Below are positions 1-62,771 of a DNA stretch of 64,000 nt, piece after piece. The position numbers and the translations under genes were made by a program. The number at the start of each line of letters is the position of its first letter. The first letter of the stretch is position 1. The stretch is from Octopus sinensis. Taxonomy: Eukaryota. The notes below the pieces were generated by a model. That model was given only the letters and a program-made list of their open reading frames with translations, was not told where the DNA came from and ran no database searches. Location of the stretch: the NCBI RefSeq assembly GCF_006345805.1, contig NC_043004.1:31000001-31064000 (forward strand), written 5' to 3'.

Positions 1-665
1 AACAACCTTTGGTTTGCCATATCACCAAAACATGTACCGAAAATGATAAAAATCAAACAACCAGTCAACATCATGGTGTTTGGAGTGATTACTTGTGATG
101 ACAATGTTATGTCTCCATTCATCTTCCCACTCAGCCTTAGACACAACGTGGAAGCCTACATTAAGTGCCTGGAGGAAGTAGTACTGCTCTGGGTCAAGAG
201 GGTAGCTGCAGGAAGACCCTATGTCTGGCAACAGGATATTGCACCATGCCACACAAGCAAGAGAACCCTGTTATGGAAGTCAGACAATTTCTGCAACTAC
301 ACCACCCCTAACACATGGCCATCTAACTCCCCAAACTGTAACCCCACTCCCCTGATTATTATGTGTAGGGTGCAGTTGAGCATGAGATCAGCAAACTCCT
401 TGAAACTCCAAAAATGAACTGAAGGCAACGATTATGACAGCATTGACCAACTTAAACAAGGAGACCATCCAGAAGACTTGCAGGAGATTCCAAAGTTGTC
501 TGGAGGCTGAGGTTGAAGCCAATAGTGATTTTATTGAATAAATTTACTCTTTAGTATTTCAAGATATTTCTATGTAATTTTGGTAAATAGATCTGTTAAA
601 ATGAGATGTCAGTGTTATTTTCATTTTTGCATTATTTAGATGACAATTCATTCACAGCACACCTG
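1..665 (+). mobile_element. IS630-Tc1-mariner (maT/DD37D-like) transposon, 3' part, decayed
   Basis: ORF 43-417 has IMVFGVIT..PFIFP..YIKCLEEVV..YVWQQD.APCHTS..WPSNSP.CNP. The right end gacaattcattcacagcacacctg is followed by TA and matches the ends of the copies at 11397 and 62224. Confidence 0.85.
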
Positions 666-4929: not shown

Positions 4930-5118
4930 AAGACGCCATGATAGATCGTTAGCCACTACACACATTTTTTTCTCTCCTTTTTTTTCTGTGTACCTTTCTG
5001 TAGAAGAGAATAGGCTCGAAACGTAAAAGACTTTTTCTATTCCTGAGCGTTATACTAATACACCTGTTTGTTTTGTACACCACCTGTCTTCGTTTTTTGT
5101 TTTTTTCGTAAACTTTCC

Positions 5119-5122
<4 letters not shown>
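4930..5122 (+). mobile_element. Penelope-type terminal repeat (pLTR) relic with degenerate hammerhead motif
   Basis: cttt ctgtaga a gag..gctc gaaac gta aaag at 4994-5029. Flanked by (TA)n and adjacent to a PLE RT fragment. Confidence 0.55.
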
Positions 5123-5149
<27 letters not shown>

Positions 5150-5156
<7 letters not shown>

Positions 5157-5495
5157 CTTAAAACCATTCCTCAAGCATATCAAAAGCTACGTAAGGGACG
5201 ACTTGGACATGCTCAATCACCTCCCTAAAACAATAAACAAAAACACCCTACTAGTATCCTTCAATGTAGTCAACCTCTATTCTAATATCCCTCACAGCCT
5301 AGGAATAGAGGCAATTCAATTCTGGCCAGAGAATTATGCCAATCGCATCAAAAAGAATTTGTAATAGAAGGGCTAAAATTCATCTTGGAGAATAACTACT
5401 TTGCAATGGGTACAAGAATGACCCCTTCCTTTGCTAACCTAATCATGGGTTATCTAGAAATCAGTCTTTATTATAAGGTACTAGAAAAGTACTAG
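5150..5495 (+). mobile_element. Penelope-like (Neptune-type) reverse transcriptase fragment
   Basis: LKPFLKHIKSYVRDDLD..LVSFNVVNLYSNIPHSLGIEAI..FILENNYF, then AMGTRMTPSFANLIMGYLE after an internal deletion. Confidence 0.8.
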
Positions 5496-11396: not shown

Positions 11397-12235
11397 CAAG
11401 GTGCGATGGGTAAATTGACACCATCTTATGTATTTAATTTTATGCTTGTGTATTATTTATTTTTGATTTTGTTGACTACACAGTATATTAGGGTCAGTTG
11501 GGCAATGTCTATGAGAAAAACAGCACCATGATGCAATTCCCTCGGACAGAAATTTGGAAATGACATGCATTTGTGCCAGAGCTCTAATACAAACATTTCA
11601 GAGTGTTTGGGTGTCAATTTGAGGACAGTGCAATCTGAGGAGATGTACTGAGAGTGATAAAAATCAAACATCCAATCAACATCATGGTGTTTGGAGTGAT
11701 CACTAGTGATGGTGACATAATGCCTCTATTCATCTTCCCACACAGCCTTAGACTCAACACAGAGACCTACATCAAGTGCCTGGAGGAGATAGTGCTGCCC
11801 TGGGTCAAGAGAGGGTGTTGCTGGAAGACTTATGTCTGGCAAAAGGACTCTTCACCATGCCATACAAGCAGAAGAACCCAGTCATGGCAGTGAGACAATT
11901 TCTGCAACCACATCACTCCTAACATTTGGCCACCTAACTCCCCAGACTGCAACCCCCTTAATTATTATGTATGGGTTGCAGTTGAGCAAGAGACCAACAA
12001 AACTCCTTGTAACACCATCACCAACTTAAACAAGGACACCGTTTAGAAGAGTTGCAGGAGATTCCAAAGTCATCTGAAGGCCATGGTTGAAGACAATGGC
12101 GATTTTATTGAATAAATTTGTTCTTTATTTCAAGATATTTTTATGCAATTTTGGTAAATATATCTGCTAAAATGAGATGTCAGTGTTATTTTCATTTTTG
12201 TGCAATTTAGGCAACAGTATATTCACTGCACTCTG
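11397..12235 (+). mobile_element. Internally deleted maT/DD37D-like transposon
   Basis: ORF 11654-11893 IKHPINIMVFGVITSDGD.MP.FIFPH.LRLNTE. Both termini are present and match the copies at 1-665 and 62224-62771. Confidence 0.9.
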
Positions 12236-12253
12236 TGTGTATATATATATACT

Positions 12254-12680
12254 CTCTCTTTTACTTGTTTCAGTCATTTGACTGTGGCCATGCTGGAGCA
12301 CCACCTTTTTGTAGAGCAAATCAACCCCAGGACTTATTCTGTGTAAGCCTAGTACTTATTCTATCGGTCTCTTGCCGAACTGCTAAGTTACGGGGACATA
12401 AAAACACCAGCATCGGTTGTCAAGCAATGCTGGGGGGACAAACACAGACACATAAGCATATACACACACACATACATATAAATATATATATATATATACA
12501 TATATATACATATATACGACGGGCTTCTTTCAGTTTCCATCTACCAAATCCACTCACAAGGCTTTGGCCAGCCTGAGGCTATAATAGAAGACACTTGCCC
12601 AAGGTGCCACACAGTGGGACTGAATCCAGAACCATGTAGTTCGTAAGCAAGCTACTTACCACACATCCACTCCTACACCT
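12254..12680 (-). mobile_element. tRNA-derived SINE (second family, with internal (CA/TA)n)
   Basis: cttttacttgtttcagtcatttgactg...cccaaggtgccac.cagtgggactgaa.cc..aaccatgt. B-box ggttcagtccc on the minus strand. Confidence 0.85.
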
Positions 12681-20130: not shown

Positions 20131-20700
20131 TAATAAATCTCTGAACGAGGTATAAACAGTAACTGCACGACAATGTGAGGTATATTTGCCATCTCAATAT
20201 GGTTCCAGGAGAATATCTCCTCCAGCTGGCTATAGGCACACTTTCTGTGCCCTATCGGTATTTGCAAAGGGAGGTCATCCTTCCCTTGTCAACCTAAGTG
20301 ATACGCACGGACTGCAGTTTCTGGGTCTTGACCCATCATCAGCGTACGACAATCACTGGTTTTCAATTAAAAGAGTTCCCAATGCAAATATTAATATCCT
20401 TTTTCCAGTAACTTTTCATCACTGATCTTGAAAAAGTGTATACAAGCAATAATAAATCTCTGAACAAGGTATAAACAGTAACTGCACGACAATGTGAGGT
20501 ATATTTGCCATCTCAATATGGCTAACCACTAAGAGTGGGTGTTACTGTAGCTTGTAGCCCCAGGAGAACATCTCCTCCAGCTGGCTATAGGCATACTTTC
20601 TGTGCCCTATCGGTATTTGCAAAGGGAGGTCATCCTACACATCACGAAAGTACAGATTTACCTCCATTCCCTCTAGAAAAGATGAGCTGTAAACCTTATT
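20131..20700 (-). mobile_element. Partial tandem repeat (Penelope pLTR / retrozyme-like) containing a hammerhead ribozyme
   Basis: Direct repeats 20131-20281 and 20450-20636 (the first lacks ~36 bp) flank a segment that holds the hammerhead. Confidence 0.7.
20304..20348 (-). ncRNA. Minimal type I hammerhead ribozyme (intact core, GUC cleavage site)
   Basis: Minus strand CGUACG CUGAUGA UGGGUC AA GACCCA GAAAC UGCA GUC CGUGCG. Helix I has 6 bp (one G-U), helix II is perfect, and helix III is palindromic (ACUGCAGU). Confidence 0.85.
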
Positions 20701-20759
20701 CTTCTGTCAGTAATCTTCTATCTATCTTACTCTTTATTCTTCTATTTTATTCCTTATAA

Positions 20760-20915
20760 ACTCTGAATTTCCCTGCCTAGAACTTTCATACATACTCACC
20801 CTGTCTCTAATGACAGAATACCCAGTGTACAGACATGCTAGCCTATCACTTGGGATATCCCAGAAACAGCTGTAAGACTTCAAATTTACCCTAAAATAAA
20901 ATTATTCTATATGAC
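20760..20915 (+). mobile_element. Penelope-type terminal repeat relic with hammerhead-like motif
   Basis: gtct ctaatga ... ccca gaaac agct gta agac at 20803-20878. Homologous to 33270-33395 (-). Confidence 0.55.
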
Positions 20916-21179
20916 TTGTGATATATACATCCTACCTTGGTTTTTGTTGTCTTTTTTCCCATATTTATATATATATGTGTGTATATATACATCTGATGTA
21001 AACAAACAAGTTTGTTTTCGAAACATTGAAATGTATTATAGAACAAGTGGAGAGATAAATTTTAATCAACACATAGATACACGTTGATTAAAATTTATCT
21101 TTCTACTTGTTCTACAATATATATATATATTAATTCTATTTATATATATATATATCTTAATACAAAGAAACAGGGAAAA

Positions 21180-21310: not shown

Positions 21311-22000
21311 GAAGGTGAAATAAAGCAGCAAAGATGAGGAGGGGCAAGGGCCACAAACACTAAAACAACATGTGTGCTCAGTTTGATTTTTGCAGACATT
21401 AGCAATTAACTTGAAAAATTATGTTTTATTGTTTAAAAAATTTTTTTAACTGAAGAAAAGAAAACCCATGTTCGAACTGAAACAAAAACACACCGCATAT
21501 TCAGTAACATCCATTGTTTCAAGAGTCATAGGCATTTCATTCCTGCACACGATAAACTTTTATTACCTTTTAAGTGATGTGTAGTAAATTTGTGAAAACG
21601 CTTTCTTCAAATTCATTAGATAATATTTGAGCAATTTTTTTTTCACTTTCATAAGACAAAGTCATTTCATTTCATATATTTAGAGCATGAACAAAGAAGA
21701 TATTTATAGTCTCATACAATATGACAGCTTATACAAAAAGGAATAATATAATATAATATATAAAAATAGCAATAACATTGGAAAGGCAAACACTCCTTCA
21801 AGTACACACTACAACAGTGAATTCTAGTATTTCCCATCCAGTATGTGTCACAGACTGTGATATTCCTCTTTGTTTATTTTCTATTGTACACACACACACA
21901 CACACACACAAATATATATATAGTTATGTTATATTCTGTTAGAAATGTGATAGAGTACAGTATAATGCCTCCAGAATTACCCAGTACTCTTTCTCTTTTC

Positions 22001-22394
22001 TCTTTTACTTGTTTCAGTCATTTGACTGCGGCCATGCTGGAGCACCACCTTTAATCGAGCAACTCGACCCCGGGACTTATTCTTTTGTAAGCCCAGTACT
22101 TATTCTATCGGTCTCTTTTGCCGAACCGCTAAGTAACGGGGACATAAACACACCACCATCGGTTGTCAAGCAATGCTAGGGGGACAAACACAGACACACA
22201 AACACACACACGCATATATATACATATATATGACAGGCTTCTTTCAGTTTCCGTCTACCAAATCCACTCACAAGGCTTTGGTCGGCCCAAGGCTACAGTA
22301 GAAGAGACTTGCCCAAGGTGCCACACAGTGGGACTGAACCCGGAACCATGTGGTTGGTAAACAAGCTACTTACCACACAGCCACTCCTGCGCCT
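22001..22394 (-). mobile_element. tRNA-derived SINE, near full length, relatively young
   Basis: Same family as 12254-12680, with many CpGs retained. Confidence 0.9.
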
Positions 22395-23109
22395 ATCCAT
22401 AATATTATTATATACTTCCAAGTTTAAATTTGGGTATTCATCATGTGTGAATATAAAATTGAAGAAATTGGATTCAAGAAGAAGGAGTATGGCTGAACAT
22501 TTATTTATTATTCATTACAATTGCTTTTGACAAAACCTAGTTCTCCAAGAATACAGGTATTTGATTATGCAACTGTTTATTTGCATAGTGAGATCTAGTT
22601 GTATTTCCTCAAGCAATATATGAGCATTGTCTCTTAGTTTAAAGTCGTTGACTTCAAGGCCATCTCCTCTGTTCATCGTGGTTTGAATTTAGTAGCGGCT
22701 GATAGACCAATGGTGTGTGCTGTGAAAGTGACAAATATGCTCCCATGGCACACAAAATTCCTTTACACACGTCAGCACACACACACACACACCACACACA
22801 CACACACACATACACATGGACAAACATGCATGCGCACACATGCACACCCATACACGTGCATACACACACATGCCCACACACACATACATGCTTACACACA
22901 CATACATGCATATTCATTCATATGTACATATGTATATTTGCATGCATGTATGCATGCATACCTGTGTACATGAATACCATTGTGCATGCACATGCATAAG
23001 TATACACATGCAAAAATAAGCATTGGAGATTGGTAAGTATTGGGAATTGGTAAGCATTAGAACTGGTATGCATTGGGGATTGGTAAATGGTTGTCCTGCT
23101 CATGGGGTT

Positions 23110-24560
23110 GGTTGGTAGTGGTGACCTTGGTGCAGGTGGAGCAGAGTAGCAGGTGGTGCTAAGGTAGTATATCTGGGTTGTTGGCAGTCAGAAGCCTGAA
23201 ATTTGCCAGAAATGCATACCTCTGGTGACAGCAATACAATAAATCCTATTTCTTGTCGATGAATGCTGCAGGTTGTTGGAGGATATGCAGTTTTTCATGG
23301 AGGCAGAGCTGGCAGTTGGAAGCACTAGGTGAATATGGTGATGCTCTGTCGATAATAGCCCACTTGATGCTGGGTATTTCATCTCGGAGATCACAGATTC
23401 TCCAGAGAAAACAAGACAAGGAAGTAGAGTTTTCTCTGTTCCTTGACCTGAACGAGTGCATAGGCTGGGAGTATCTTACCTTGAAGTCATTAGCTATCAA
23501 ACCCATATAGAGCCTCCTAATACCATCGGATGGTGTGAGGGTGGCTCTGTATACTACAATCCTTGAAAGCAAGATCCTTCTAGAGGGCACATGGTGACGT
23601 GGTCTGGGTGCATTTTTATGCTTGTTGATGCAAGCGTTGTTAGATGTAATGTTGTCTAAGCAGGAGTAGCTCACTTTGATATTATGGGTGTTCAAGGGTT
23701 TGTAATACTTATGGCCTCTGGGAAGTGTTTCTTAATTAGCTTCGTTGGTGGAAACTTCTAGGTTAAAAGAGGAGTTATACCATATAATTTTCCTTCTCTT
23801 AATCATTTTGAGGTGAGGAGAGGGTGTTTGGGAGTTGTCCACATATGTGAGCTTCTTAGTAAACGTGCTCCTAGCCAAAGTATTGTTGTAGTGGGAGGCA
23901 GCCCTGTTAAATATCTCTCTATTAGCCAAGAGATTAAATGGTCATTTACTAATGCCTGGAACCAGGTTTCTAATTACTGCAGGGGAATGGTTTGAGCTCT
24001 TATGAATGTATACTGTATCCTCATTAGGCATCCTGTATGGGTAATACTTGCCTATACTCAGGTGTAAGGTTACATCCAAGAAATCGACCATGGTCATGTG
24101 GGTGGTAACCATTATGGACAGGTCAAACTCCTTAAATATTTTTATCAAGTCCTTCCTGAATTTGTCCATGGTGTGGCTATTCATATGGCTTGAGATAGCT
24201 AGGCCGTCCCACCTATAGAGAACCGACCTATATCGGTGGGTATGTTTCTTGATGGTATCCAAGTTGTGTAACCCAATGAGGTCAGTGATTTCAGCCCCAT
24301 CAAAGCTCCCCATAGAGGCATCAAACAAAGGGCCACTTCCTTTTTCCCTCAGAAGGTATCGTCATGGGCCAGAATTGACTTTCTAACATTCATGATAATT
24401 TTAATGTCCAGGTCACTAATGCTGGTGTATTACTCAGCAAAAGTTAGGTCCTTCAAAACGTGGGGCTTAGATATGGAAGGGTAGAAGTCAACAATGTTGA
24501 TCTGGGTGATTCTACAGGCTGATTTATTCTTGATACCATGGAAACAGTCGACCACGTCTG
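23110..24560 (-). mobile_element. Penelope-like retroelement (RT + C-terminal GIY-YIG), decayed
   Basis: FDASMGSFDGAEI..LYRWDGLAI..DFLDVTL..YIHKSSNH; RKIIWYN; KVSYSC; VVYRAT..LYMGL..FKVRY..STSLS..W..CQLCLHEK. Confidence 0.9.
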
Positions 24561-25039
24561 CACATGTGTATATACATGACTGGTAATGTACCCCTGAAAT
24601 AGGTGTAGATAGAACACGCTCCTATTTTGGGATCCTTTTCATTTATGTTTTTTTAACTTTGATATCTAGCATTCTTTCTGTATTACATTCTATATGTATA
24701 AGTGATTTTTAGATGATTTAGGGAGTTTGCCATTTTAAAAGTTGACATTTTTATTCCTATATTTATCAACCTCTCATTCATTTTGCACCTCCTATGTTTA
24801 TTACACATAACCCCTTACATGTAAATTTTATTTATATGTAATTTTATAAGTTTTCTTATATATTTTTATATTTTTTCTATAATTTTATGTATTTTTGGTT
24901 TTATTCCCTATACCCTTGAAGAATCTTTATGCCTGTACATGCATGATTTATGTTGATGGGTATAAATATATATGATTCAACTACTTTGATTGAATATTTT
25001 CATTCATGCATTCGGGAATCAGTGTGACTTTTTTCTTTT

Positions 25040-25248
25040 TTTTTTTATATTTGTTTTGGTCATTTGACTGCAGCCATGCTAGAATGCCACCTTTAGTTGA
25101 ACAAATCGATCCCAGGACTTATTCCTTATAAGCCTAGTTCTTATTTTATCATCCTCTTTTGCTGAACCAATAAGCTACAGGGCTGTAAACACACCAACAT
25201 CCATTGTCAAGCGATGGTAGGGGGACAAACGCAGACACACAAACATGT

Positions 25249-25294
<46 letters not shown>

Positions 25295-25880
25295 TCTATA
25301 TATATATACATATGCATGATGGGCTTCTTTCAGTTTCCGTCTACCAAATCCATCGATTTGCTCGATTAAAGGCGGTGCTCCAGCATGGCCGCAGTCAAAT
25401 GACTGAAACAAGTAAAAGAGTAAAAGTGTAATATATATATATATATATATATATATATTCTGTATTATATATATATATATATATTATCTTTTATACTTTA
25501 CTTGTTTCAGTCATTAGAATATGGCCATGTTTGGGCGCAGTCTAGAAAAATTTTAGTCAAATGAATCAACACAAGTACTTATTTTTTTAAGCCTGCTACT
25601 TATCCTACCGATTTCTTTTGCCAAACTACTAAGTTATTGGAACATAAACACATCAACACTGGTTACCAATCAGTGGAGAGGGACAAACACAGACACACAC
25701 AAAGATATATACAAATATACAACAGGCTTCTTTCAATTTCCATCTACCAAATTCACTCACAAGTCTTTGGTTGGCTGGAGGTTATGGTAGAAGACACTTT
25801 CCCAAGGTGCCATGCAGTAGGACTGAACCCAGAATCATGTGGTTGTTAGGGAGTATACTTCTTAGCAAACAGCCATGCCT
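25040..25880 (-). mobile_element. Cluster of SINE copies, including an inverted SINE 3' end at 25354-25425
   Basis: Same SINE family as 22001. The segment cgatttgctcg..gcagtcaaatgactgaaacaagtaaaaga is in the opposite orientation. Confidence 0.8.
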
Positions 25881-33171: not shown

Positions 33172-33222
<51 letters not shown>

Positions 33223-33239
33223 GCATATATTATATTAGA

Positions 33240-33480
33240 GGAAAAATCAAAAGCCAAGGCAGAATGAGTAGCTCAAGTCATTTAGAATAATTTAATTAGG
33301 GTAAGATGAATTTGGAGTCTTACAGCCGTTTCTGGGATAAGCCATGAGGTAGGTTAGCATGTTCACACACTCAGTACTCTGTCATCAGAGATAAGGTATG
33401 AATATTTTAGACAGGGAAAATTTACAATTTGTAAGGGATAAAAATTCACAGTTTATAAGGAATAAAATAGAAGAATGTTC
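33240..33480 (-). mobile_element. Penelope-type terminal repeat relic with hammerhead-like motif
   Basis: Minus strand atct CTGATGA ... ccca GAAAC ggct GTA agac at 33392-33317. Homologous to 20760-20915. Confidence 0.55.
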
Positions 33481-33534
33481 ATGTGTGTGTGTGTATATAT
33501 ATACACACTCAATTCAAAACAATATCTGTCAAAA

Positions 33535-33690
33535 CAATATCTGTGTATCACGATTTCTGGGTTATTTCTTTTCATCAGCACAGAATAATTGCTCAGCTAG
33601 AGGTGGCACTGCCAAATTCCCATTCAAAGTGTATAGTTTTCAAAGTGACAACCAGTCACTGATTTATAAATTAGAAAATTACTATTTTTA
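33535..33690 (+). mobile_element. Second 3' UTR copy of the same element, tail-to-tail with the first
   Basis: Reverse complement of 33714-33845 with a ~21 bp insertion. Both ORF tracks share RGG.AKFPF..YSFQSD. Confidence 0.8.
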
Positions 33691-33713
33691 ATTTTCACAA
33701 TGTGGGAATTGTA

Positions 33714-34645
33714 ATAGTAATTTTCTAATTTATAAATCAGTGACAAGATGTGTCACTTTGAAAACTATATATTTCAAATGGGAATTTGGCAGCACCACCT
33801 CTATGATGAAGAGAAATAACCCAGAAATCATGATACACAGATATTTTGAGCTGAGTTGGGGTGCTACATTCCCTTGCTCGAAAATATAAGGACACAGATC
33901 GTGTCGTATAACCAGCTGGAGACGAAGTCTTCTGGGGCCAAATTACAAGAACATTAGTCGTAAACGAGGACTTCCATGTTATGCAGGCAAACAATCTTTA
34001 CTATAAATTCATAGACTGAATGTAGAAGCTGAAGGTTTCAAAGCAGTTATCCATAGATATCCTTTTTATTTTTTTGATTGTCAAAGAGATATTTATATCC
34101 GCAGGGCAGCTGACCTCTATGATGGTACAGACCTTTGCTCCTCTGTCCCAAACAACAATATCCGGTCTGTTTATGTTTACTTTTGACAAAGGTATTGAAG
34201 AGAATATTTCACCAGTATTTCTTGAGTAGGTGTTTATGAACATATTCCATAACAGAGGGATTTTCTAAATTTATTTCAGGACAGTCTTTTTTGCAGATGG
34301 CATTGTAAATTGTTTTAGCAACATCATGCCACATAGGGAGGTAGTACCATGATGACATTTTAGGGCAAATGCTAATCACATGCATGATGTCTTCTACAGA
34401 AACATGACATAGCCTACACATGCAGTTGCACTTTGGAATTACAAGAGTATCACTGGTTTTCTTGTTCACCTGGTAGTTTGTGGCAATCTGCAGTTCCTGG
34501 ATTGCAAACACATATCCTGCAAAGTGCGATGTAGTGGACTTGTGTCCAAGAGAGGCTGCGCTTCATGTCAATTCTACTATCTTCTTCAAGCTTCCAGGCA
34601 ACATACCCATGCATAGTCTCTTTTTAGTATGCCAAATGCTTTCCA
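33714..34645 (-). mobile_element. RLE-type (restriction-like endonuclease) non-LTR retrotransposon, 3' part
   Basis: CRLC..SVEDIMHVISIC (CCHC knuckle) followed by NRPDIVVWD..CTIIEVSCP (PD..D..E motif). The 3' UTR ends tagaaaattactatt. Confidence 0.85.
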
Positions 34646-36744: not shown

Positions 36745-37130
36745 TACACATAGGCACAAGCATGGCTGTCTGCTTAAGAGGTTTGCTTCCCAACCACATG
36801 GTTCTGAGTTCACTGCCATGCATGGCACCTTGGGCAAGTATCTTCTTCTATTGCCCCAAACTGACCAAAGACTTGTGAGTGGATTTGATAGATGGAAACG
36901 GAAAGAAGCCTATTGTGTGTGTGTGTGTGTTTCGTATTTGTCCCTCACTACTCCTTGACAACCAGTGCTGGTTTGTTTACATCCCTATCACTTAGCAGTT
37001 AAACAAAAGAGACCAATAGAATAAGTATCAAACTTAAAAACAGAAAGAAAGTTCTGGGGTCAATTTGTTTGACTAAACCCTTCACGGTGATGCTCCAGCA
37101 TGGCCACTGTTTTGTGACTGAAATAAGTAA
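36745..37130 (+). mobile_element. tRNA-derived SINE
   Basis: Same family as 22001, plus orientation. Confidence 0.75.
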
Positions 37131-40564: not shown

Positions 40565-40889
40565 ACAAATGTCTGTGTGGTAAGAAGCTTGCTTCCCAAC
40601 CACATGGATCTGGGTTCAGTCCCACTGCATGCCAGCTTCGGCAATTGTCTTCTACCATAGACTTGGGCTGACCAAAGCCTTGTGAGTGGATTTCGTAGAT
40701 AGAAACTGAAAGAAGCCCATTGTATATGCATGTGTGTGTGTCCTCATAACTTAGTGCTTTGGCAAAAGACACCGACAGAATATAAGTATTAGGCTTACAA
40801 AGAATAAGTCCAGGGGTTGATTTGTTCAACTAAAGGCGATGCTCCAGCATGGGCATAGTCAAATGACTGAAGCAAGGAAAAGAATAAAA

Positions 40890-40890
<1 letters not shown>
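40565..40890 (+). mobile_element. tRNA-derived SINE
   Basis: tgtggtaagaagcttgc..gggttcagtcccactgc head. Same family as 22001. Confidence 0.85.
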
Positions 40891-42558: not shown

Positions 42559-43799
42559 TTGGGTTGGCAACTAAGTTCTTGAAGATTTTAAAATTTTAGA
42601 ATTTATTGCGTTTATAAATTTTGGAATCTATTTTTTTCGAGAATTCTATTTTTGAATCATTTTGGAATCTATTCTGTTTGTTTTTTTTCTAGTTAATTTT
42701 AGTTAATTTTTGTTTATGTTCAGATCATTAAAATGGATTGTCAAGTTAAGAAAAACAAGCATTTTGAAGGTTCTAAGGCCACAAAAGCTGCTTGCGACGT
42801 TTGTGCTGTGTATGGAGAGGGTGCCATAGTTGAAAGAACCGCTCATGATTGGTATGCCAAGTTCAAAAATGGACATTTTGACCTCAAAGACGCGCCTCGT
42901 TCTGGTCATCCAGTTGAATTCGATGAAGAGCGATTAAACCAACTTTTGTACGAAAATTCTCGTCAAACGATAAGAGAACTCGTAGAGAAAATGGAATGCT
43001 CCCACACTGCTATAGAGAAGCATCTTCAGAAGTATGGAGCATGGATTCTGCATGCTTTAAGTGACAACAGCAAAAATCAACAAGCCACAATCTCTGCTGG
43101 TTTGCTTGCTCATCACAGCTCAACTCATGAACACAAGCAACGATTTCTTTACCAAATCATTACTGGCAACGAAAAATGGTGCCTGTACATCAATATGAAG
43201 CAGCATAAGGAATGGCTTAGCCCCAGTAAACAAGCGACACCGCACGTGAAGCAAGATCTTCATCCATGTAAAACGATGTTGTGCATATGGTGGGACTGAG
43301 AAGGGATTATCCAATTACGAATTGCTTGAATGGGACCAAACAGTCAACGTGGAACTTTATGTTCAATAGATGGAATAACTCAAGAGAAAAGACCTAATCA
43401 TCAGCATGGAGTTCTTCTGCTGCACGACAACACCTGCCCTCATATCGCCAATATGACCAAGAAAGACATTCAAACGCATGGCTGGGAAGTGCTGCCACAC
43501 CCACTGTACTCTCCTGATTTGGCACCAACAGATTTCTACCTCTTTCGATCTCTTTCAAATGCTATGCGCAGAATTTTGTTCAATACTGATGCAGAATTCA
43601 GAGCTTAGGTGGATCAATTTTTCGAGTCAAAATCAGGTGAGTTCTACCAACAAGGTATTGAAAATCTTGTTGAATGTTGGGAAGAAGTTGTAAACAACAA
43701 GGGTGAATACATTATTGATTAATTAGTTGTTATTTTTTTATTAAAACTTTTTAAAAATTTAAATTTATAAAAGCTGCGGGAACTTAGTTGCCAACCCAA
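42559..43799 (+). mobile_element. Near full-length mariner (DD34D), disrupted transposase
   Basis: TIRs ttgggttggcaactaagtt at both ends with TA TSD. ORFs with PRSGHP, IITGNEKWCLY, LLLHDNTCPH and YSPDLAPTDFYLFRSL. Confidence 0.95.
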
Positions 43800-43869: not shown

Positions 43870-45745
43870 ATGAAAGTTACAAAGAGAGCCATATCCCAAC
43901 TAATTAGGGAGAGAGTTAGTCTAGATGAGATGCAGTTTAGTTTTGTGCCATGGAGAAACACAACTGATGCTATATATTTCTGGTAAGACAGCTAAAGGAG
44001 AAATACCTAGCCAAAGATAAGCATCTGTACTTGGTTTTTGTTGACATACAGAAAGCCTTTGACAGAATCCCCCAATCCCTTATCTGGTGGTCAATGTGGA
44101 AACTAGGGATAGATGAGTGTTTGATGAGAGCTGTACAAGTCATGTACAGAGATGCTACCATGAGGGTTGGCAATGAGTACAGCAAAGAATTCAGGATACA
44201 AGTAGGGATTCACCAAGGATCGGTGTTCAGACCCCTCTTGTTCATCATAATCCTCCAAGCAATAACAGAGGAATTTCAGACAGGCTGCCCCTTGGAGCTC
44301 CTCTATGCTAATGACTTTGCTCTTATAGTTGAATCACTATCAGAATTAGAGAAGTTTCAGGTATGGAAACAAGGTCTAGAATCCAAGGGTCTTAGAGTTA
44401 ACCTAGCAAAAACCAAAGTCTTAGTAAGTAGGAAGGCAGACAAATCCTAAATCCCTTCAGAGAGATGGCCCTGCTCAATCTGTAGAAAAGGTGTAGGTAG
44501 AAACTCCATAAGATGCACCCAGTGTAAGCTTTGGACACATAAAAGGTGCAGCAATATCAAAGGAAGGCTAATGGGAAAACTAGCTGTTGCTTGTGGGAGA
44601 TGCACAGGTACAATAAACGCTAAAAATGTACAGAAAATAGACTCCATCAACTGCCAGAGGGACAAGCTAGAGGTAGTAGATAGCTTCCATTATCTAGGTG
44701 ACCAAGTTAGTAGTGGAGGGGGATGCTCCGACAGTGCAACTGTGAGAAAAAGATTAGGCTGGGTAAAGATCAGAGAGCACCTACCTCTGCTAGCGACAAA
44801 TGGCCTCTCTCTCAGAGTGAAAGGCAGATTGTATGATGCCTGTGTGTGAACAACTATGCTACATGGTAATGAAACATGAGCTATAACAGCCAAGGACATG
44901 CATCGGCTTGAAAGAAATGAAGCCAGTATGCTTTGCTGAATGTGCAATGCCAGTGTGCATGATCAACAGTGTAAGCATCTTGAGGGAAAAGTTAGGCATA
45001 AGAGGCATCAGATGTGGTGTGTAAGAGAGACAACTGTGCTAGTATGGTCATATGACACATATGGATGAGGACAGCTGTGTAAAGAAGTGTTGATCTCTAA
45101 CTGTGGAAGGAACCTGTGGTAGAGGTGGACCCAGGAAGCCATGAGACGAAGTGGTGAAGCATGATCTTCAAACTTTGAGCCTCACAGAGGCAATGACAAG
45201 TAACCGAGATCTTTGGTGATATGCTGTGTTTGAGAAAACCTGTCAAGCCAAGTGAAATTGTAGTCATGGCTTATGTTGGTGTCATGTAACTCATGCTGGT
45301 GGCACATAAAGTGCACCATTTGAGCATTGGGCCTCACAGAGGCAAAGTGGATGAATTCCTTTCAAGCTTCGGGCCTCAGCTGAGTTCTTTTCAAGTGTTG
45401 GGCTGTACGGAGGCAAAGTGGCTGAGTTCCTTTCGAGCATTGGGCCTCACGGAGGCAATGACTGAGACCTTTGGCATTATGTCATGCTTAAGAAGTCTCA
45501 TCAAGCTGAGCAAACTCGCAGTCATGTCAGATACCAGTGTCACACAAATGGTACCTGTGCCAGTGGCCCGTAAAAGTACCGATTATACTCTCAGAGTGAT
45601 TGGTATTAGAAAGGGCATCCAGCTTTAGAAAACCATGCCAAATCAGACTGGAGTCTGGTGCAGCCTTCCAGTTTACCAGCCCTGGTCAAACCGTCCAACC
45701 CATGCCAGCATGGATAATGAACATTAAATGATGATGATGATGATA
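43870..45745 (+). mobile_element. RTE-clade LINE, 5'-truncated (RT, Cys-rich finger, 3' UTR, (GAT)n tail)
   Basis: FVDIQKAFDRIP..QVGIHQGSVF.PLLFII..LLYANDFAL..GLRVNLAKTKV; WPCSICRKGVG.NSI.C..C..WTHKRC. Confidence 0.92.
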
Positions 45746-46330: not shown

Positions 46331-46534
46331 CTAAAAGATAAAATGGCAGCATCATTTTCAATTATGTTAAAGAGACAAATATTTGTCCAGGATCAAAATG
46401 GATTTCAAAATAACTGCAATAAACTGCGTAAATTTTTAGCATTCAGATTACTGTCAAATGTAATGCTTATTCATTTACGCTGTTTTGAATAAATCATGTA
46501 TTACTTCATAGCTTTAAGATTTCCATGACATTTT

Positions 46535-46995
46535 TTATCTTTAATCTTTTACTTGTTTCAGTCATTTGACTGTGGCCATGCTGGGGCACCACCTTGAAGG
46601 GTTTTAGTTGAATAAATTGATCCCAGGACTTCTTTTTCTGGTTTTTTTTTATAAGCCTGATACTTATTCTATCAGTCTCTTTTTGTAAACCGATTAAGTT
46701 ATGTGGATGCAAACACACCAACACCAGTTTTCAAGGGGTGGGGGTGGGGGCAAACACAGACATAAAGACACGCATGCATACATAGATTGCATGCATACAT
46801 ACATATATACATATATACATACATATATGCATGCACACACACACACACACACAAGATGGACTTCTTTCAGTTTCCATCCACCAAATCCACTCACAAAGCT
46901 TTGGTCGGCCAGAGGATATAGTAGAAGACGCTTACCCAGGGTGCCACACAGTAGGACTGAACCTGGAACCATGTGATTGGGAAACAAGCTTCTGT
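46535..46995 (-). mobile_element. tRNA-derived SINE
   Basis: Same family as 22001. Confidence 0.85.
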
Positions 46996-47169: not shown

Positions 47170-48110
47170 CCACATGCAATGTATCTCCTGAAGGAAAGGC
47201 ACCCGACCACCAGGGTAGAACCTTTGCTTTTCTTCTGGGGCTCCACTTACCTGGTGCCACTGACTCCCAGCTTTCTTGCCACAAGCTTCCATCTTTTATT
47301 GAATCTCTCTAGTGACAGGTACTTCTTCTCCAGTCTGATTTTACTGCTGAGGTGGTAACTAAAAAGCTGACCAACCCCTGGCCAGATACAAAGGTACCCA
47401 TCACTATTCCTTTCACATATATCTTCCATTGTGCTTCTTTCAGTATGGCTACTATGCAGAAAAAGCAAGCCTTTCTCTCCCTGTTAAGGGAAGGAGGAGG
47501 CACAATCTTGATGATAGATTCAGCCAATAGCTGTACTCTTCCTATCGATGACAACAGTTGTTCTGCGATAGCTATCAGTCCTGTTAATTCCGGACACTCC
47601 ACAAATGCATGCAAAATTGTTTCCCTGTCCTGCCCGCACCTTGGACATGTCAGCGAGACAGCACTTCCATGCCTTGACAGTTTATCACGAACAGGTAACG
47701 CCGCACAGAAGCACTGCCAAACCAGGGATTTCTGGTAATTATCCAGATACCCCAGCCTGAAAGCTCTCTTGAACAGGTTGATCAACTGATTTTCCTCATA
47801 GCCCAGGGTCTCTCCCAAGGTGTCTTCGGACATAATCTCCACTAACCTGCTATAAAAATCTGCGGTGTTTCTAAAACTGAAAATTCAGAGCAACTGAAGA
47901 GCCTGACAGAATTCCAATTGCCAGTCCCCCAGCCTAGGTCTCTGCTTGATCCATGTACCAATGTTCATTGAGGATGTTAACTGCGGAAGATAGAACCACA
48001 CATGCGGTGACCACACCAGCTCTCCATCCTTAATGCAAGTTTTTGCATCTTCAGCCAAGGCATCCCATAGCTCAGCCTCATTACAGACTGTCTTCAAAGG
48101 TGCTCAGCTT
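47170..48110 (-). mobile_element. L1/Tx1-type non-LTR ORF2 C-terminal region, decayed
   Basis: KSLVWQC...ALPVRDKL.RHG..SLTCPRCGQDRETILHAFVECP is a zf-RVT/CCHC knuckle. Confidence 0.8.
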
Positions 48111-55640: not shown

Positions 55641-56752
55641 CAGGGGTTGGACAAAATAATGGAAATGCCTTAAAATGTCAAACAAATTTATTTTAATATG
55701 GAGTAGGACCGCCTTTGGGAGTATTACAGTTTGAATTCTATGAGGTATGGACTTGTACAAAGTTTGAATTATTTCCAAAGGAATTTTTGTCCATTCTTCA
55801 GCTAATGTCCAACTTCACTAGAATGTTCCTCATGCCATTCAGTAACAACATTAGCTGTGTGAATTGGTGAATTGGTGCATTATCATCCTGAAAGATTGTG
55901 TTTCCCTTCGGAAACAGTTCTGCAATCATAGGATGAATTTGATCAGATAAAATGCTTAAATAGTCATGAATATTAATTCTGCCATGAAGGGAAACCATTG
56001 GGCTGGCAGATTTCCAAGATATAGCCCCCAGATTATCACAGATAATGTTTTACAGTTGGAAGAAGGCAATCTGGGTCAAATGCTTCTTTTGGCTGTCTCC
56101 ACACATAAACCCAGCTGGTGGTCAGAAATAAGGTAAAGGATGACTTGTTCGAGAAAATAACATTCTTCCACTGTTCTTGGGACCAACTCTGTAGGTTTTT
56201 ACTCCACTCTAAATGCTTTGTAACATTTGTTTTTGAAAGTAGTGGTTTTCTGATTGCAGCCCTCCCATGAATTCTAGCTTTGTGCAGCTCCTGGCAAACA
56301 TTTTTTGTGAAAACTGGGTTCTTGAGGTGGTCTTTAAGCTCTGCAGTAATTTTGGGAGCTGTGCTTTTGCAATCCTTTCTAACAATTCATGTAAGAGTTT
56401 GACAGTCCTTATCTGAAAGTTTTGGTTTTCTTCCAGAGTTTTGTTTCAGTGAGGTGGTTTTTCCATTTCTCAAAGGCTGTCATTACTTTTCAGACAGTAT
56501 GCTAGTGCCTGCCATACAAGCACCAACAATTTGACCCCTTTGAAAGTCCAATAGATCTGTCATTTTAATGAATCTTAATTACCTTTTTCTGATGATATCT
56601 GGAAAGAAACAGCAATTTTAGCAAAACATATTAAGCAACACTAATAATAAATCAAAAAACATAAAAATAAACAAGCTTTTGACAGTTTTATAAATATTTC
56701 AAAATTATGATGCTATGATGCTAGGTGTTTCCATTATTTTGTCCAACCCCTG
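55641..56752 (-). mobile_element. Tc1 (DD34E-type) transposon, deleted
   Basis: TIRs caggggttggacaaaataatggaaa at both ends with TA TSD. Peptide IFQDDNAPIH. Confidence 0.92.
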
Positions 56753-61918: not shown

Positions 61919-62140
61919 AGTTAATCCAAACATGAAAACAAAGAGAAAACACAACTCGAGGACGTGGAACAAGTATAGTATTATTGGACACTCAGAAAAG
62001 AAGGAAAGAAGGAAAGAAGGAAGGTTTAACGTTTCGAGCAGAGCTCTTCGTCAGAAACATGGGAAAAGGAACGATCCAAAGAAAGGAAGACGGAGGGAAA
62101 AAAATCGCCAACGGTATACACACGGTCACATTTTGAAAGT
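61919..62140 (-). mobile_element. Penelope-type terminal repeat with hammerhead motif
   Basis: Minus strand GUUU CUGACGA A GAGC UCU GCUC GAAAC GUU AAAC at 62058-62024. Flanked by (TA)n. Confidence 0.7.
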
Positions 62141-62223: not shown

Positions 62224-62771
62224 CAGGGCACGATGGGTAAATTATCGCCATCTTATATTTTTAATTTTGCACATGAACATTGTTTGTTTTGGATTTTGTC
62301 AACTATACAGTATAGTAGGGTCAGTTGGGCACCGTCTGTGAGAAAAACAGCACCATGATACAATTCACTCTGCCAGAAATTTGGAAATGACATGCTGTAC
62401 CGCTTGGCATTCACACCAGAAGCTCCAATATCAACATTTCAGAATGTCAATCTAAGGTCAGTGCATGTACCAAGAGTGATAAAACTCAAACACCTGGTCA
62501 ACATCATGGTATTTGGAGTGATCACTACTGATGGTGACGTTATGCCTCCATTCATCTTCCCACACAGCCTCAGACTCAACACAGCGGCCTACATCAAGTG
62601 CCTGGAGGAGGTAGTGCTGCCCTGGGTCAATGGCAATTTTACTGAATAAATTTACTCTTTAGTTTTCATGATATTTTTATGTAATTTTGGTAATTATATC
62701 TGTTAAGATGAGATGTCAGTGTTATTTTCATTTTTGTGTAATTTAGACGACTGTTTGTTCACCACATTCTG
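62224..62771 (+). mobile_element. Doubly deleted maT/DD37D-like transposon
   Basis: IKLKHLVNIMVFGVITTDGDVMPPFIFPH. Both termini match the copy at 11397. Confidence 0.9.

What the first reader, a model, noticed from the sequence alone, without database searches (positions are those of the whole stretch)
20131..20636. Intact minimal hammerhead ribozyme in a ~320-355 nt partial tandem: candidate cephalopod retrozyme / circRNA unit
Seen: the minus strand of 20304-20348 reads CGUACG-CUGAUGA-UGGGUC-AA-GACCCA-GAAAC-UGCA-GUC-CGUGCG. Every core nucleotide is canonical, helices I and II pair, the cleavage triplet is GUC (cut between 20310 and 20309), and helix III is a palindrome. The motif sits between near-identical direct repeats (20131-20281 and 20450-20636; period 319 bp, ~355 bp if the 36-bp deletion is restored). 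Established: minimal type I hammerheads with palindromic helix III occur in Penelope-like element termini and in non-LTR metazoan retrozymes, where tandem copies self-cleave (often as dimers) and yield small circular RNAs. Inference: this repeat family may be a PLE-mobilised, self-cleaving retrozyme. Only one ribozyme copy is present here, so this locus alone cannot release a unit-length circle.
Basis: partly seen in the sequence, partly recalled or inferred. Interest (0 to 1): 0.88.

Follow-up and report, generated by a model that had tools for sequence, protein, structure and literature searches.

The report
Hammerhead ribozyme in octopus repeat
A real-looking self-cleaving hammerhead RNA motif sits inside a 355-base repeat present as about one and a half copies in what is almost certainly octopus DNA; it is most likely a stranded copy of a known kind of small ribozyme-carrying mobile element, so it is a modest new example, not a new kind of thing.

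Summary
The minus strand 20348-20304 is a complete type I hammerhead, and it cuts after C20310. It is the only such motif in the window; the chance expectation is 0.003-0.05 per window. It lies between direct repeats 20131-20281 and 20450-20636 (97-99% identical, 355-nt unit, 1.43 copies). Sequence outside the motif extends helix I into a roughly 50-bp rod (z = -5).

Corrections:
- It is a canonical-architecture metazoan type I hammerhead, not a "minimal" one.
- The most conserved helix II pair, 10.1-11.1, is U-A instead of G-C.
- Rfam does not detect it, even at E <= 10.
- The right repeat copy plus about 360 bp of its "flank" have an older collinear relative at 33180-34030 that lacks the ribozyme segment. 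So 20636 is not an insertion boundary.
- No second copy of the ribozyme segment could be found in any reachable data.

Context:
- The window is octopod.
- It holds a decayed Hydra-clade Penelope-like element on the same strand, 2.6 kb away.
- It also holds a separate PLE-type minimal hammerhead at 62058-62024.
- Hydra-type PLEs from other organisms carry hammerheads with U at 10.1 and a similarly short, loop-capped helix III.

Verdict: a probable dead-end copy of a PLE-associated, retrozyme-like element. It is a new member of a known kind, of moderate-to-low interest.

The parts
20304..20348 (-). Type I hammerhead ribozyme: helix I CGUACG/CGUGCG, core CUGAUGA...GAA, helix II UGGG(UCAAGA)CCCA, helix III AC(UGCA)GU. 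Predicted cut between 20310 and 20309.
   Evidence: Sequence read. Only descriptor hit in the window; chance expectation 0.003-0.047 per window. The double-hammerhead dimer fold scores -33.3 kcal/mol, against -8.2 kcal/mol for the monomeric hammerhead fold.
20252..20400 (-). Extended rod. Beyond the 6-bp helix I come an internal loop (UGU/U), a closing stem (GUGAU/AUCAC) and further imperfect pairing of 20400-20349 with 20303-20252.
   Evidence: With the hammerhead replaced by a tetraloop, the flanks alone fold at -33.3 kcal/mol. That gives z = -5.0, with 0 of 500 shuffles reaching it and 2.8% of same-geometry genomic controls reaching it.
20282..20449 (-). Segment Y: the 168-nt ribozyme-bearing part of the unit, unique in the window.
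   Evidence: Self-BLAST and local alignment find no relative elsewhere in the window or next to locus B; scores equal those of shuffles.
20131..20281 (-). Repeat copy X' (151 nt), which lacks the 36-nt segment.
   Evidence: the repeat finder families D2 and D3, 97-99% identity; alignment.
20450..20636 (-). Repeat copy X (187 nt). The extra hairpin-forming segment is 20522-20559. Y + X make the 355-nt unit.
   Evidence: The virtual 355-nt circle has MFE -101 kcal/mol, z = -3.3, GC 41%. The longest ORF in a virtual tandem is 84 aa, and it has no match in the protein database.
20637..21000 (.). Linker (20637-20735) and segment Z (20736-~21000). This is the continuation of an older dispersed repeat that also includes X, and it ends in a (TA)n/(TG)n microsatellite.
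   Evidence: Collinear with 33180-34030. Identity is 73-80% in Z, about 58-60% in the linker and 60-70% in X.
33180..34030 (.). Locus B: an inverted, diverged relative of X-linker-Z without the ribozyme segment. It is interrupted by an unrelated 310-bp foldback element at 33536-33845.
   Evidence: The inverted-repeat arms of the foldback are 89-95% complementary.
23249..24621 (-). Decayed, 5'-truncated Hydra-clade Penelope-like element (RT plus GIY-YIG endonuclease in four ORF fragments). It is on the same strand as the ribozyme, 2.6 kb upstream of it.
   Evidence: 512 homologues; the best has E = 3e-81 at 38% identity. The homologues carry the RWK, DKT, CxCX5C, CxxC..E and CxH..N motifs listed for the Hydra clade in PMC8557442.
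62024..62058 (-). Separate PLE-type minimal hammerhead: GUUU CUGACGA A GAGC(UCU)GCUC GAAA CG U U|AAAC.
   Evidence: Found. A min-HHR descriptor gave 0 hits in 300 simulated windows. Its features match the min-HHR description in PMC4209133.

Best explanation
The motif is a genuine, DNA-encoded type I hammerhead ribozyme. It belongs to a short (355-nt), non-coding, highly self-paired unit that is a Penelope-like-element-associated non-autonomous retroelement: a non-LTR 'retrozyme' in the broad sense. It lies in an octopod genome.

How the family would work (inferred from the described retrozymes, not shown here):
1. Head-to-tail copies are transcribed on the minus strand.
2. Each hammerhead cuts after GUC. 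It is helped by pairing of two hammerheads through the palindromic ACUGCAGU helix III.
3. The 355-nt monomers, with 5'-OH and 2',3'-cyclic phosphate ends, are circularised by a host RNA ligase.
4. A PLE reverse transcriptase copies circular or multimeric RNA into cDNA. That cDNA inserts as more than one unit.

This particular locus is a dead end. It has 1.43 units (X'-Y-X) and a single ribozyme, so a transcript would be cut once and no unit-length RNA could be released.

The unit's 187-nt X module is shared with an older, longer repeat (X-linker-Z). This suggests that the short ribozyme unit and the longer repeat are relatives using the same 3' module, as expected if retrozymes derive from PLE terminal regions.
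For: Shown directly:
- The complete hammerhead is unique in the window, with a chance expectation of 0.003-0.047.
- Features not used in that search also fit:
  - Helix I continues into a long rod: z = -5, 0 of 500 shuffles, 2.8% of genomic controls.
  - Helix III is a perfect palindrome. The double-hammerhead dimer fold is about 17 kcal/mol better than two monomeric hammerhead folds.
  - The motif lies in the only direct repeat in the window with a period above 124 bp, which covers 0.8% of the window.
- The unit matches the published description of metazoan retrozymes (PMC7229834):
  - 355 nt, 41% GC, no meaningful ORF;
  - circular MFE z = -3.3;
  - no ribozyme on the other strand.
- The cleavage site is internal and uninterrupted. 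The template was therefore either uncut or religated.

Context:
- The window is octopod.
- A Hydra-clade PLE relic lies on the same strand.
- A PLE-type min-HHR lies at 62 kb.
- In 8 loci (6 families) of Hydra-type PLEs from other organisms, the hammerhead has a pyrimidine at 10.1 (U.U or C.A, never G-C) and a short, loop-capped helix III after GAAAC (palindromic in one locus, near-palindromic in others), like the window's motif.
- PLE insertions typically form partial tandems (PMC8557442).
- Retrozymes are related to PLE pLTRs (bioRxiv 10.64898/2026.07.22.740005).
Against: - No second copy of the ribozyme segment Y was found anywhere:
  - not in the window;
  - not in 20 kb of Octopus bimaculoides DNA;
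  - not in the protein-ORF database;
  The cephalopod genomes themselves could not be searched.
- There are only 1.43 units and one ribozyme.
- The 10.1-11.1 pair is U-A, where G-C is highly conserved (PMC4209133, PMC3088659). Rfam models give no match. Activity is therefore unproven.
- The one detectable relative of the repeat (locus B) has X-linker-Z but no ribozyme segment, and the tandem's right edge is not an insertion boundary. The 355-nt 'unit' may not be the mobile unit.
- No target-site duplication is visible.
- The strand orientation of the older repeat is undetermined. If it is plus-sense, the ribozyme is antisense to it.
Confidence: 0.55

Rival explanations
1. The locus is the end of a longer PLE-type element, not a 355-nt retrozyme. 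Read on the minus strand, a 5'-truncated copy (Z-linker-X) is followed head-to-tail by an internally deleted copy (Y with the hammerhead, then X'). That is the partial tandem / pseudo-LTR arrangement that PLE insertion produces. The ribozyme would process long tandem PLE transcripts instead of releasing small circles.
For: - X is continuous with linker-Z, and this whole block has a diverged relative at locus B that looks like a copy retaining only the X-side end.
- PLEs show frequent 5' truncation, partial tandems and adjacent inverted copies (PMC8557442).
- Hydra-type PLEs carry their hammerhead 31-460 nt downstream of the ORF, and again in terminal repeats.
- A Hydra-type relic lies 2.6 kb away on the same strand.
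Against: - No RT/EN coding sequence or coding relic adjoins the unit.
- The nearby Hydra relic shares no sequence with X, Y or Z and is much more decayed than the 97-99% identical repeats.
- The hammerhead lies between the direct repeats, not inside them as in PLE pLTRs (PMC4209133).
- Both copies of Z stop at a (TA)n tract at the same place, which is not what independent 5' truncation predicts.
Confidence: 0.25
2. The hammerhead is not functional. It is either a chance or decaying motif, or it is antisense to a SINE-like plus-strand repeat (X-linker-Z with a microsatellite tail). In this reading the X'-Y-X arrangement is a local DNA-level rearrangement.
For: - U10.1-A11.1 replaces the most conserved helix II pair, and Rfam gives no match.
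- The nearest-neighbour MFE of the 45-mer (-14.1 kcal/mol) is an alternative fold, not the hammerhead fold at -8.2 kcal/mol.
- Locus B lacks Y.
- Both copies of the older repeat end in a microsatellite at the plus-strand 3' side, as SINE/LINE tails do.
- Scaled to a genome of about 2.7 Gb, the strict motif alone would occur by chance roughly a hundred times (my extrapolation).
Against: - The joint occurrence of four features is hard to get by chance:
  - the complete motif;
  - a palindromic loop 3;
  - a 50-bp helix I extension (2.8% of controls);
  - location in the only long-period repeat in the window (0.8% of it).
  My rough product gives about 5e-8 to 7e-7 per window, which is below 0.03 per genome.
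- All four helix II pairs differ from the Rfam consensus yet still pair (one search compared).
- A single simple tandem duplication gives 2.0 copies, not 1.43.
Confidence: 0.12
3. The hammerhead is a host-exapted cis-acting ribozyme, for example in an intron or UTR, like the amniote HH9/HH10 motifs. It would regulate a host transcript.
For: Conserved intronic type I hammerheads exist as Rfam families (Hammerhead_HH9 is listed). The giant squid genome paper lists 235 Rfam Hammerhead_1 hits under cis-regulatory elements (PMC6962438).
Against: - No host gene is evident around the locus.
- Every ORF examined in the window is transposon-derived or low-complexity.
- The motif sits in a young partial tandem repeat.
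- No conservation data are available.
Confidence: 0.03

Closest known systems
Metazoan non-LTR retrozymes (Cervera & de la Pena 2020, PMC7229834), e.g. the Mytilus galloprovincialis 350-390-nt repeats
   Same: - Type I hammerhead in a unit of about 350 nt, with low GC (41%) and no coding capacity.
- Strong predicted self-pairing.
- Helix III of 2 bp capped by a tetraloop, as described for invertebrate retrozymes.
- Mollusc host.
- PLEs co-exist in the same genome.
   Different: - Only 1.43 units and one ribozyme at this locus.
- No further copies could be examined.
- U-A at 10.1-11.1.
- One repeat copy is continuous with a longer, older repeat.
- Expression and circularity are unknown.
Hammerheads of Hydra-clade Penelope-like elements (clade defined in Craig et al. 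2021, PMC8557442; sequences seen here in L121-L129)
   Same: - The same layout: CUGAnGA, a pyrimidine at 10.1, a short helix II, GAAAC, a 4-5-nt loop (palindromic or nearly so), GU-H.
- A Hydra-type relic lies in the window on the same strand.
   Different: - Hydra hammerheads have U.U or C.A at 10.1-11.1, where the window has a U-A pair.
- They lie 31-460 nt downstream of an RT-EN ORF and within terminal repeats. The window's motif has no adjacent ORF and lies between the repeats.
- There is no nucleotide similarity outside the motif.
PLE minimal hammerheads (min-HHR; Cervera & de la Pena 2014, PMC4209133)
   Same: A palindromic element around positions 15.2-16.2 that allows double-hammerhead dimers, and an association with PLE-rich genomes.
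   Different: min-HHRs lack helix III and loop 3. [quoted passage not shown] The finding has none of these. The separate motif at 62058-62024 has all of them.
Amphibian, Schistosoma and cave-cricket satellite hammerheads (Rfam Hammerhead_1, RF00163)
   Same: Type I topology, a 6-bp helix I, a 4-bp helix II with a loop of about 6 nt, and a short palindromic helix III. These ribozymes are active mainly as dimers in tandem transcripts.
   Different: All four helix II pairs differ from the Rfam consensus GUCC/GGAC. The Rfam score falls below the E <= 10 reporting limit, whereas controls score 32-33 bits.

Membership tests
Hammerhead ribozyme, type I | Conserved core: C3 U4 G5 A6 N7 G8 A9, G12 A13 A14, A15.1-U16.1, H17 | tested here: met
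   CUGAUGA ... GAA A...U C are all present. The motif passes the descriptor. The core definition follows PMC3088659.
Hammerhead ribozyme, type I | Three helices around the core, with helix I open and Watson-Crick or wobble pairs next to the core | tested here: met
   Helix I 6 bp, helix II 4-6 bp, helix III 2 bp plus a tetraloop; the 1.1-2.1, 10.1-11.1 and 15.1-16.1 positions all pair.
Hammerhead ribozyme, type I | G10.1-C11.1 pair (highly conserved, not absolute) | tested here: not met
   The pair is U-A. Its conservation is stated in PMC4209133 and PMC3088659. Natural variants with a U-U mismatch here are known to be active.
Hammerhead ribozyme, type I | Match to the Rfam covariance model RF00163 at its gathering score (34 bits) | tested here: not met
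   No match at gathering score or at E <= 10 on 64 kb, 601 nt or 81 nt. Positive controls L011 and L081 score 32-33 bits.
Hammerhead ribozyme, type I | Site-specific self-cleavage | not testable with these tools
   Needs in vitro transcription and cleavage assays.
Non-LTR retrozyme | Type I hammerhead within short tandem repeats of about 150-450 bp (dimers to multimers) | tested here: inconclusive
   The 355-bp period fits, but there are only 1.43 copies with one ribozyme.
Non-LTR retrozyme | Low GC (below 45%), no LTR/PBS/PPT, no coding capacity | tested here: met
   GC is 41%. The longest ORF in a virtual tandem is 84 aa, with no homologue. The direct repeats flank only 168 nt. PBS and PPT were not searched for.
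Non-LTR retrozyme | Unit RNA is highly self-paired | tested here: met
   Circular MFE is -101 kcal/mol, z = -3.3. The flank-only rod has z = -5.0. These are predictions only.
Non-LTR retrozyme | Multi-copy family with the ribozyme conserved across copies | tested here: inconclusive
   No second copy of segment Y was found in the window, in L122, or in the metagenome, genome or protein collections. Cephalopod assemblies could not be searched.
Non-LTR retrozyme | Expressed as linear and circular RNA of unit length | not testable with these tools
   No transcript data are available.
Non-LTR retrozyme | Co-occurrence with autonomous PLEs in the genome | tested here: met
   A Hydra-clade PLE relic lies at 23249-24621. 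PLEs are reported in octopus genomes (PMC13282606). Only relics were seen here, not an intact element.
PLE pseudo-LTR min-HHR | No helix III or loop 3; an extra nucleotide between 9 and 10.1; G10.1-C11.1; located inside direct repeats that flank an RT-EN ORF | tested here: not met
   The motif has helix III plus a loop, no extra nucleotide and a U-A pair. It lies between the repeats, with no ORF between them.
Hydra-clade PLE (for the relic at 23249-24621) | C-terminal GIY-YIG endonuclease after the RT; RWK and DKT motifs; CxCX5C linker; no CCHH | tested here: inconclusive
   The window fragments align over 95% of their length with about 700-aa proteins that show RWK, DKT, CxCX5C, CxxC..E and CxH..N. 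The relic itself is 5'-truncated, so RWK and DKT are missing and the linker has decayed. No phylogeny was made.

The most novel reading that the evidence does not exclude
Octopuses carry an active retrozyme family that is partnered with Hydra-clade Penelope-like elements. Its hammerhead uses a non-G-C 10.1-11.1 pair (U-A here; U.U or C.A in Hydra-type PLEs). This would be a distinct hammerhead lineage that the Rfam models miss. In that case cephalopod tissues would hold abundant, so far unannotated 355-nt circular RNAs.
Probability: 0.25. Interest if true: 0.5.

Novelty: new member of a known kind. Interest (0 to 1): 0.3.

Why it matters
- If the family is real and active, it would extend ribozyme-bearing circular-RNA retroelements to cephalopods. 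In the paper library searched here I found only an Rfam count of Hammerhead_1 hits in the giant squid genome (PMC6962438) and no retrozyme analysis.
- It would point to Hydra-clade PLEs as a possible partner.
- It also shows a practical blind spot. A structurally complete hammerhead with a changed helix II is invisible to Rfam's Hammerhead_1 model, so covariance-model annotation of mollusc genomes probably undercounts these motifs.
- The locus itself, with a single ribozyme, is unlikely to have any function.

Tried and rejected
- **Rfam on the motif.** cmscan on the window, on 601 nt and on 81 nt found no hammerhead. Positive controls show this is a property of the narrow model, not evidence against the motif. 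The SNORD47, ZL63 and MIR821 matches at E = 0.8-7 are chance.
- **Searching for other copies through translated ORFs.** The exact 79-aa ORF is not on record. The 80-aa composite query has no homologue among 5.8 billion proteins. This says little, because eukaryotic repeats are rarely gene-called.
- **Metagenome scan** with CTGATGA N8-24 GAAACTGCAGTC. Almost all were chance matches. Three were real type I hammerheads (L011, L081, and L096 with three tandem copies), unrelated to the unit outside the motif.
- **Exact 33-mer in genome contigs:** no match.
- **Exact look-ups of two window ORFs** to place the window in a genome: not on record.
- **A hammerhead-like string in locus B** (CTGATGAAAAGAAATAACCCAGAAA, in both orientations). 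It proved to be the terminal inverted repeat of a 310-bp foldback element, with no pairing helix II. I judged it a coincidence.
- **A coding relic of the Hydra ORF upstream of the hammerhead in the unit:** no similarity.
- **The RT-like fragment at 5059-5492** is not Hydra-type and has no Pfam match. My reading of it as a canonical PLE RT rests on motif memory only.
- **A hammerhead downstream of the window's own Hydra relic:** none recognisable.
- **A custom covariance model:** not built. The available non-window hammerheads were either selected by a pattern copied from the window's motif or are too few, so the test would have been circular.
- **Viroid-like or other RNA replicon:** rejected. 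The sequence is embedded in host repeats, and no ribozyme of any Rfam family lies on the other strand.
Full report
**1. The observation**

The minus strand from 20348 to 20304 reads CGTACG-CTGATGA-TGGGTCAAGACCCA-GAAAC-TGCA-GTC-CGTGCG. This is a complete type I hammerhead.
- Helix I has 6 bp, including one G-U.
- The core boxes CUGAUGA and GAA are present.
- Helix II is 4 bp (UGGG/CCCA) with the 6-nt loop UCAAGA, whose outer bases could add one or two more pairs.
- Helix III is A15.1-U16.1 plus C-G, capped by UGCA.
- Cleavage would follow GUC, between 20310 and 20309.

A descriptor scan of both strands of the window finds only this site. Three hundred first-order Markov simulations of the window give 0.047 hits per window under loose helix limits. 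They give 0.003 under the observed helix lengths.

20131-20202 matches 20450-20521 at 99%, and 20205-20281 matches 20560-20636 at 97%. Copy 2 has 38 nt where copy 1 has 2 nt. The unit is therefore 355 nt, and 1.43 units are present. There is only one ribozyme.

**2. Is it more than chance?**

Extrapolated to a genome of about 2.7 Gb, the strict motif alone would arise by chance about a hundred times. The motif by itself is therefore not decisive. Three features that the descriptor did not use argue for a real RNA.
- *Helix I extends into a rod.* After its 6 bp come an internal loop (UGU/U), a closing stem (GUGAU/AUCAC) and further pairing of 20400-20349 with 20303-20252. With the hammerhead replaced by a tetraloop, these flanks fold at -33.3 kcal/mol. 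That is z = -5.0, reached by 0 of 500 dinucleotide shuffles and by 2.8% of same-geometry positions elsewhere in the window.
- *Helix III is a perfect palindrome (ACUGCAGU).* A double-hammerhead dimer fold scores -33.3 kcal/mol, against -8.2 kcal/mol for the monomeric hammerhead fold.
- *The motif lies in the only direct repeat with a period above 124 bp in the window.* That repeat covers 0.8% of the window.

My rough product of these factors is below 1e-6 per window, which is below 0.03 per genome. I conclude the hammerhead is real as a sequence feature, with about 0.9 confidence.

**3. Corrections to the description**

The motif is not a 'minimal' hammerhead in the sense of Cervera & de la Pena 2014. 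[quoted passage not shown] The motif here has what that paper calls the canonical metazoan architecture: helix I of 6 bp, helix II of 4 bp with a loop, and helix III of 1-2 bp with a small palindromic loop.

The 13 core positions are canonical. The 10.1-11.1 pair, however, is U-A, and this pair is described as the most conserved of the consensus after 15.1-16.1 (PMC3088659). G10.1 together with A9 forms a metal-binding site (PMC6257768).

All four helix II pairs differ from the Rfam consensus GUCC/GGAC. This explains why Rfam gives no match at gathering score or at E <= 10 on 64 kb, 601 nt or 81 nt. The same tool scores two unrelated type I hammerheads from metagenomes at 32-33 bits.

The nearest-neighbour MFE of the isolated 45-mer (-14.1 kcal/mol) is an alternative fold that pairs CUG of the core with CAG of loop 3. 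'Intact' is therefore a structural statement. Activity is unproven.

**4. The unit**

A virtual 355-nt monomer, taken from cleavage site to cleavage site, has these properties.
- GC content is 41%.
- As a circle it folds at -101 kcal/mol, z = -3.3.
- It has no ORF longer than 84 aa in a virtual tandem, and that ORF has no homologue.
- No ribozyme of any Rfam family lies on the opposite strand.

These properties match the published description of metazoan non-LTR retrozymes: repeats of about 150-450 bp, GC below 45%, no LTR/PBS/PPT, and highly self-paired circular RNAs of 170-400 nt. The mussel family is 350-390 bp (PMC7229834).

The cleavage site lies inside uninterrupted sequence. The RNA or DNA template of this copy was therefore uncut or religated.

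**5. The surroundings change the picture**

The right-hand repeat copy is not bounded by unrelated target DNA. A second locus, B (33180-34030, inverted), is collinear with X and also with the 'flank'.
- Identity is about 60-70% across X.
- It is about 58-60% across a 100-nt linker.
- It is 73-80% across segment Z (20736-~21000).
- Both copies end in a (TA)n/(TG)n tract at the Z side.

B is interrupted by an unrelated 310-bp foldback element. It has no counterpart of the ribozyme segment Y, and Y has no relative anywhere else in the window.

So X-linker-Z is an older dispersed repeat of about 550 bp, whereas the X'-Y-X arrangement (97-99% identity) is young. Two readings remain open.
- *Minus-strand sense.* The locus looks like a PLE-style partial tandem: a copy retaining the X-side end (Z-linker-X), followed by a short copy (Y-X') that shares the same 3' module.
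- *Plus-strand sense.* X-linker-Z looks like a SINE-like element with a microsatellite tail, and the ribozyme would be antisense to it.

Two copies cannot settle this. No target-site duplication is visible.

**6. Host and Penelope-like elements**

*Host.* The best match in the protein database to a Tc1-like ORF of the window is an Octopus bimaculoides protein, at 59% identity. A 20-kb stretch of O. bimaculoides chromosome CM046625.1 shares 31 interspersed-repeat matches with the window, at 66-93% identity. The window is therefore octopod.

*Hydra-clade relic.* On the same strand as the ribozyme, 2.6 kb upstream, four ORF fragments (23249-24621) align with 512 proteins of about 700 aa. The best hit has E = 3e-81 at 38% identity. 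These proteins show the RWK, DKT, CxCX5C, CxxC..E and CxH..N motifs that Craig et al. list for the Hydra clade of PLEs. The relic is far more decayed than the repeat and shares no nucleotide similarity with it. It shows that such elements lived in this genome, not that it mobilised this copy.

*Hydra-type hammerheads elsewhere.* In eight loci (six families) encoding these homologues in other organisms, a sense-strand hammerhead lies 31-460 nt downstream of the ORF, and again in terminal or inverted copies. Its form is CUGAnGA-U-[helix II]-U-GAAAC-[UCGA/UCAGA/UCUGA]-GU-H. The 10.1-11.1 position is U.U in five families and C.A in one, never G-C. The window's motif shares the U at 10.1 and the helix III style. 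This is a lead towards a Hydra-type partner, not a demonstration.

*A second hammerhead in the window.* 62058-62024 (minus strand) holds a textbook PLE min-HHR: GUUU-CUGACGA-A-GAGC(UCU)GCUC-GAAA-CG-U-U|AAAC. A min-HHR descriptor gave 0 hits in 300 simulated windows.

**7. Mechanism**

*Shown here:* a complete hammerhead at the tip of a rod, inside a 355-nt self-paired unit present as 1.43 copies.

*Inferred from the described families (PMC7229834, PMC4209133, bioRxiv 10.64898/2026.07.22.740005):*
1. Tandem copies are transcribed.
2. Hammerheads cut after GUC, probably as double hammerheads formed through the palindromic helix III.
3. Monomers are circularised by a host tRNA-type ligase.
4. A PLE reverse transcriptase copies circular or multimeric RNA, giving insertions longer than one unit.

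At this locus one cut is possible and no monomer can be released. It is best seen as a dead-end copy, comparable to the monomer derivatives discussed for vertebrate retrozymes.

**8. Comparison, novelty and limits**

Type I hammerheads are already counted in one cephalopod genome: 235 Rfam Hammerhead_1 hits in the giant squid (PMC6962438). Retrozymes are described in another mollusc, the mussel. I found no paper in the held library describing retrozymes in cephalopods. The finding is therefore a new member of a known kind.

Its points of interest are the non-G-C 10.1-11.1 pair, the resemblance to Hydra-type PLE hammerheads, and the fact that Rfam misses it.

The main limit of this work is that no cephalopod assembly could be searched by nucleotide sequence. 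The central question is whether Y-X is a multi-copy family with a conserved ribozyme. It remains open, and the genome search listed under next steps would settle it.

Noticed in passing
window 23249-24621 (-): Decayed, 5'-truncated Hydra-clade Penelope-like element: RT and GIY-YIG endonuclease split over four ORF fragments. It has 512 homologues, the best at 38% identity.
   Followed up: yes
window 62024-62058 (-): A second, independent hammerhead of the PLE 'min-HHR' type: an extra A after A9, G10.1-C11.1, palindromic ACGU with no loop 3, and a 4-bp helix I. The predicted cut is at 62028/62027. The descriptor gave 0 hits in 300 simulated windows. No PLE ORF was seen next to it.
   Followed up: partly
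window 33536-33845: A 310-bp foldback (MITE-like) element with arms 89-95% complementary, inserted into the older repeat at locus B. Its termini contain a hammerhead-like string (CTGATGA...ACCCAGAAA) that I judged coincidental.
   Followed up: partly
L121, L123, L124/L125, L126, L127, L128/L129 (contigs encoding homologues of the Hydra-type relic): All carry sense-strand hammerheads just downstream of the ORF, with U.U (or C.A) at 10.1-11.1 instead of G-C. L126 and L127 also show adjacent inverted copies, and L128 shows the motif in both terminal repeats. This fits published PLE architecture.
   Followed up: partly
L096 (metagenome contig), 12-87, 545-620, 1073-1148: Three tandem copies of a type I hammerhead at a 528-nt period, scoring 24.9 bits against Rfam Hammerhead_HH9. 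It is a retrozyme-like array of unknown eukaryotic origin within a metagenome.
   Followed up: no
window 5059-5492 (+): RT-like ORF fragments (LLVSFNVVNLYSNIP..., ...AMGTRMTPSFANLIMGYLE) that resemble canonical PLE reverse transcriptase motifs from memory. They have no Pfam match and no similarity to the Hydra-type proteins.
   Followed up: partly
window 1-414 (+), 11639-11890 (+), 62359-62646 (+): Three diverged copies of one Tc1-like transposase family. The best database match is an uncharacterised Octopus bimaculoides protein at 59% identity.
   Followed up: partly
window 57158-57840 (-); 42733-43299 (+); 43968-44447 (+); 47312-47884 (-); 56039-56386 (-): Other transposon relics: an LTR-retrotransposon RT plus integrase zinc domain, a Mos1-type mariner, a LINE-type RT with a zf-RVT domain, and a Tc3-type HTH. 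The window appears to hold transposon relics and microsatellites, with no evident host gene.
   Followed up: partly
window 21990-22400, 12255-12680, 25030-25880, 36750-37130, 40570-40890, 46530-46990: An abundant SINE-like repeat of about 400 bp (69-96% identity between copies in the window). It is also present several times in the 20-kb Octopus bimaculoides stretch L122.
   Followed up: no
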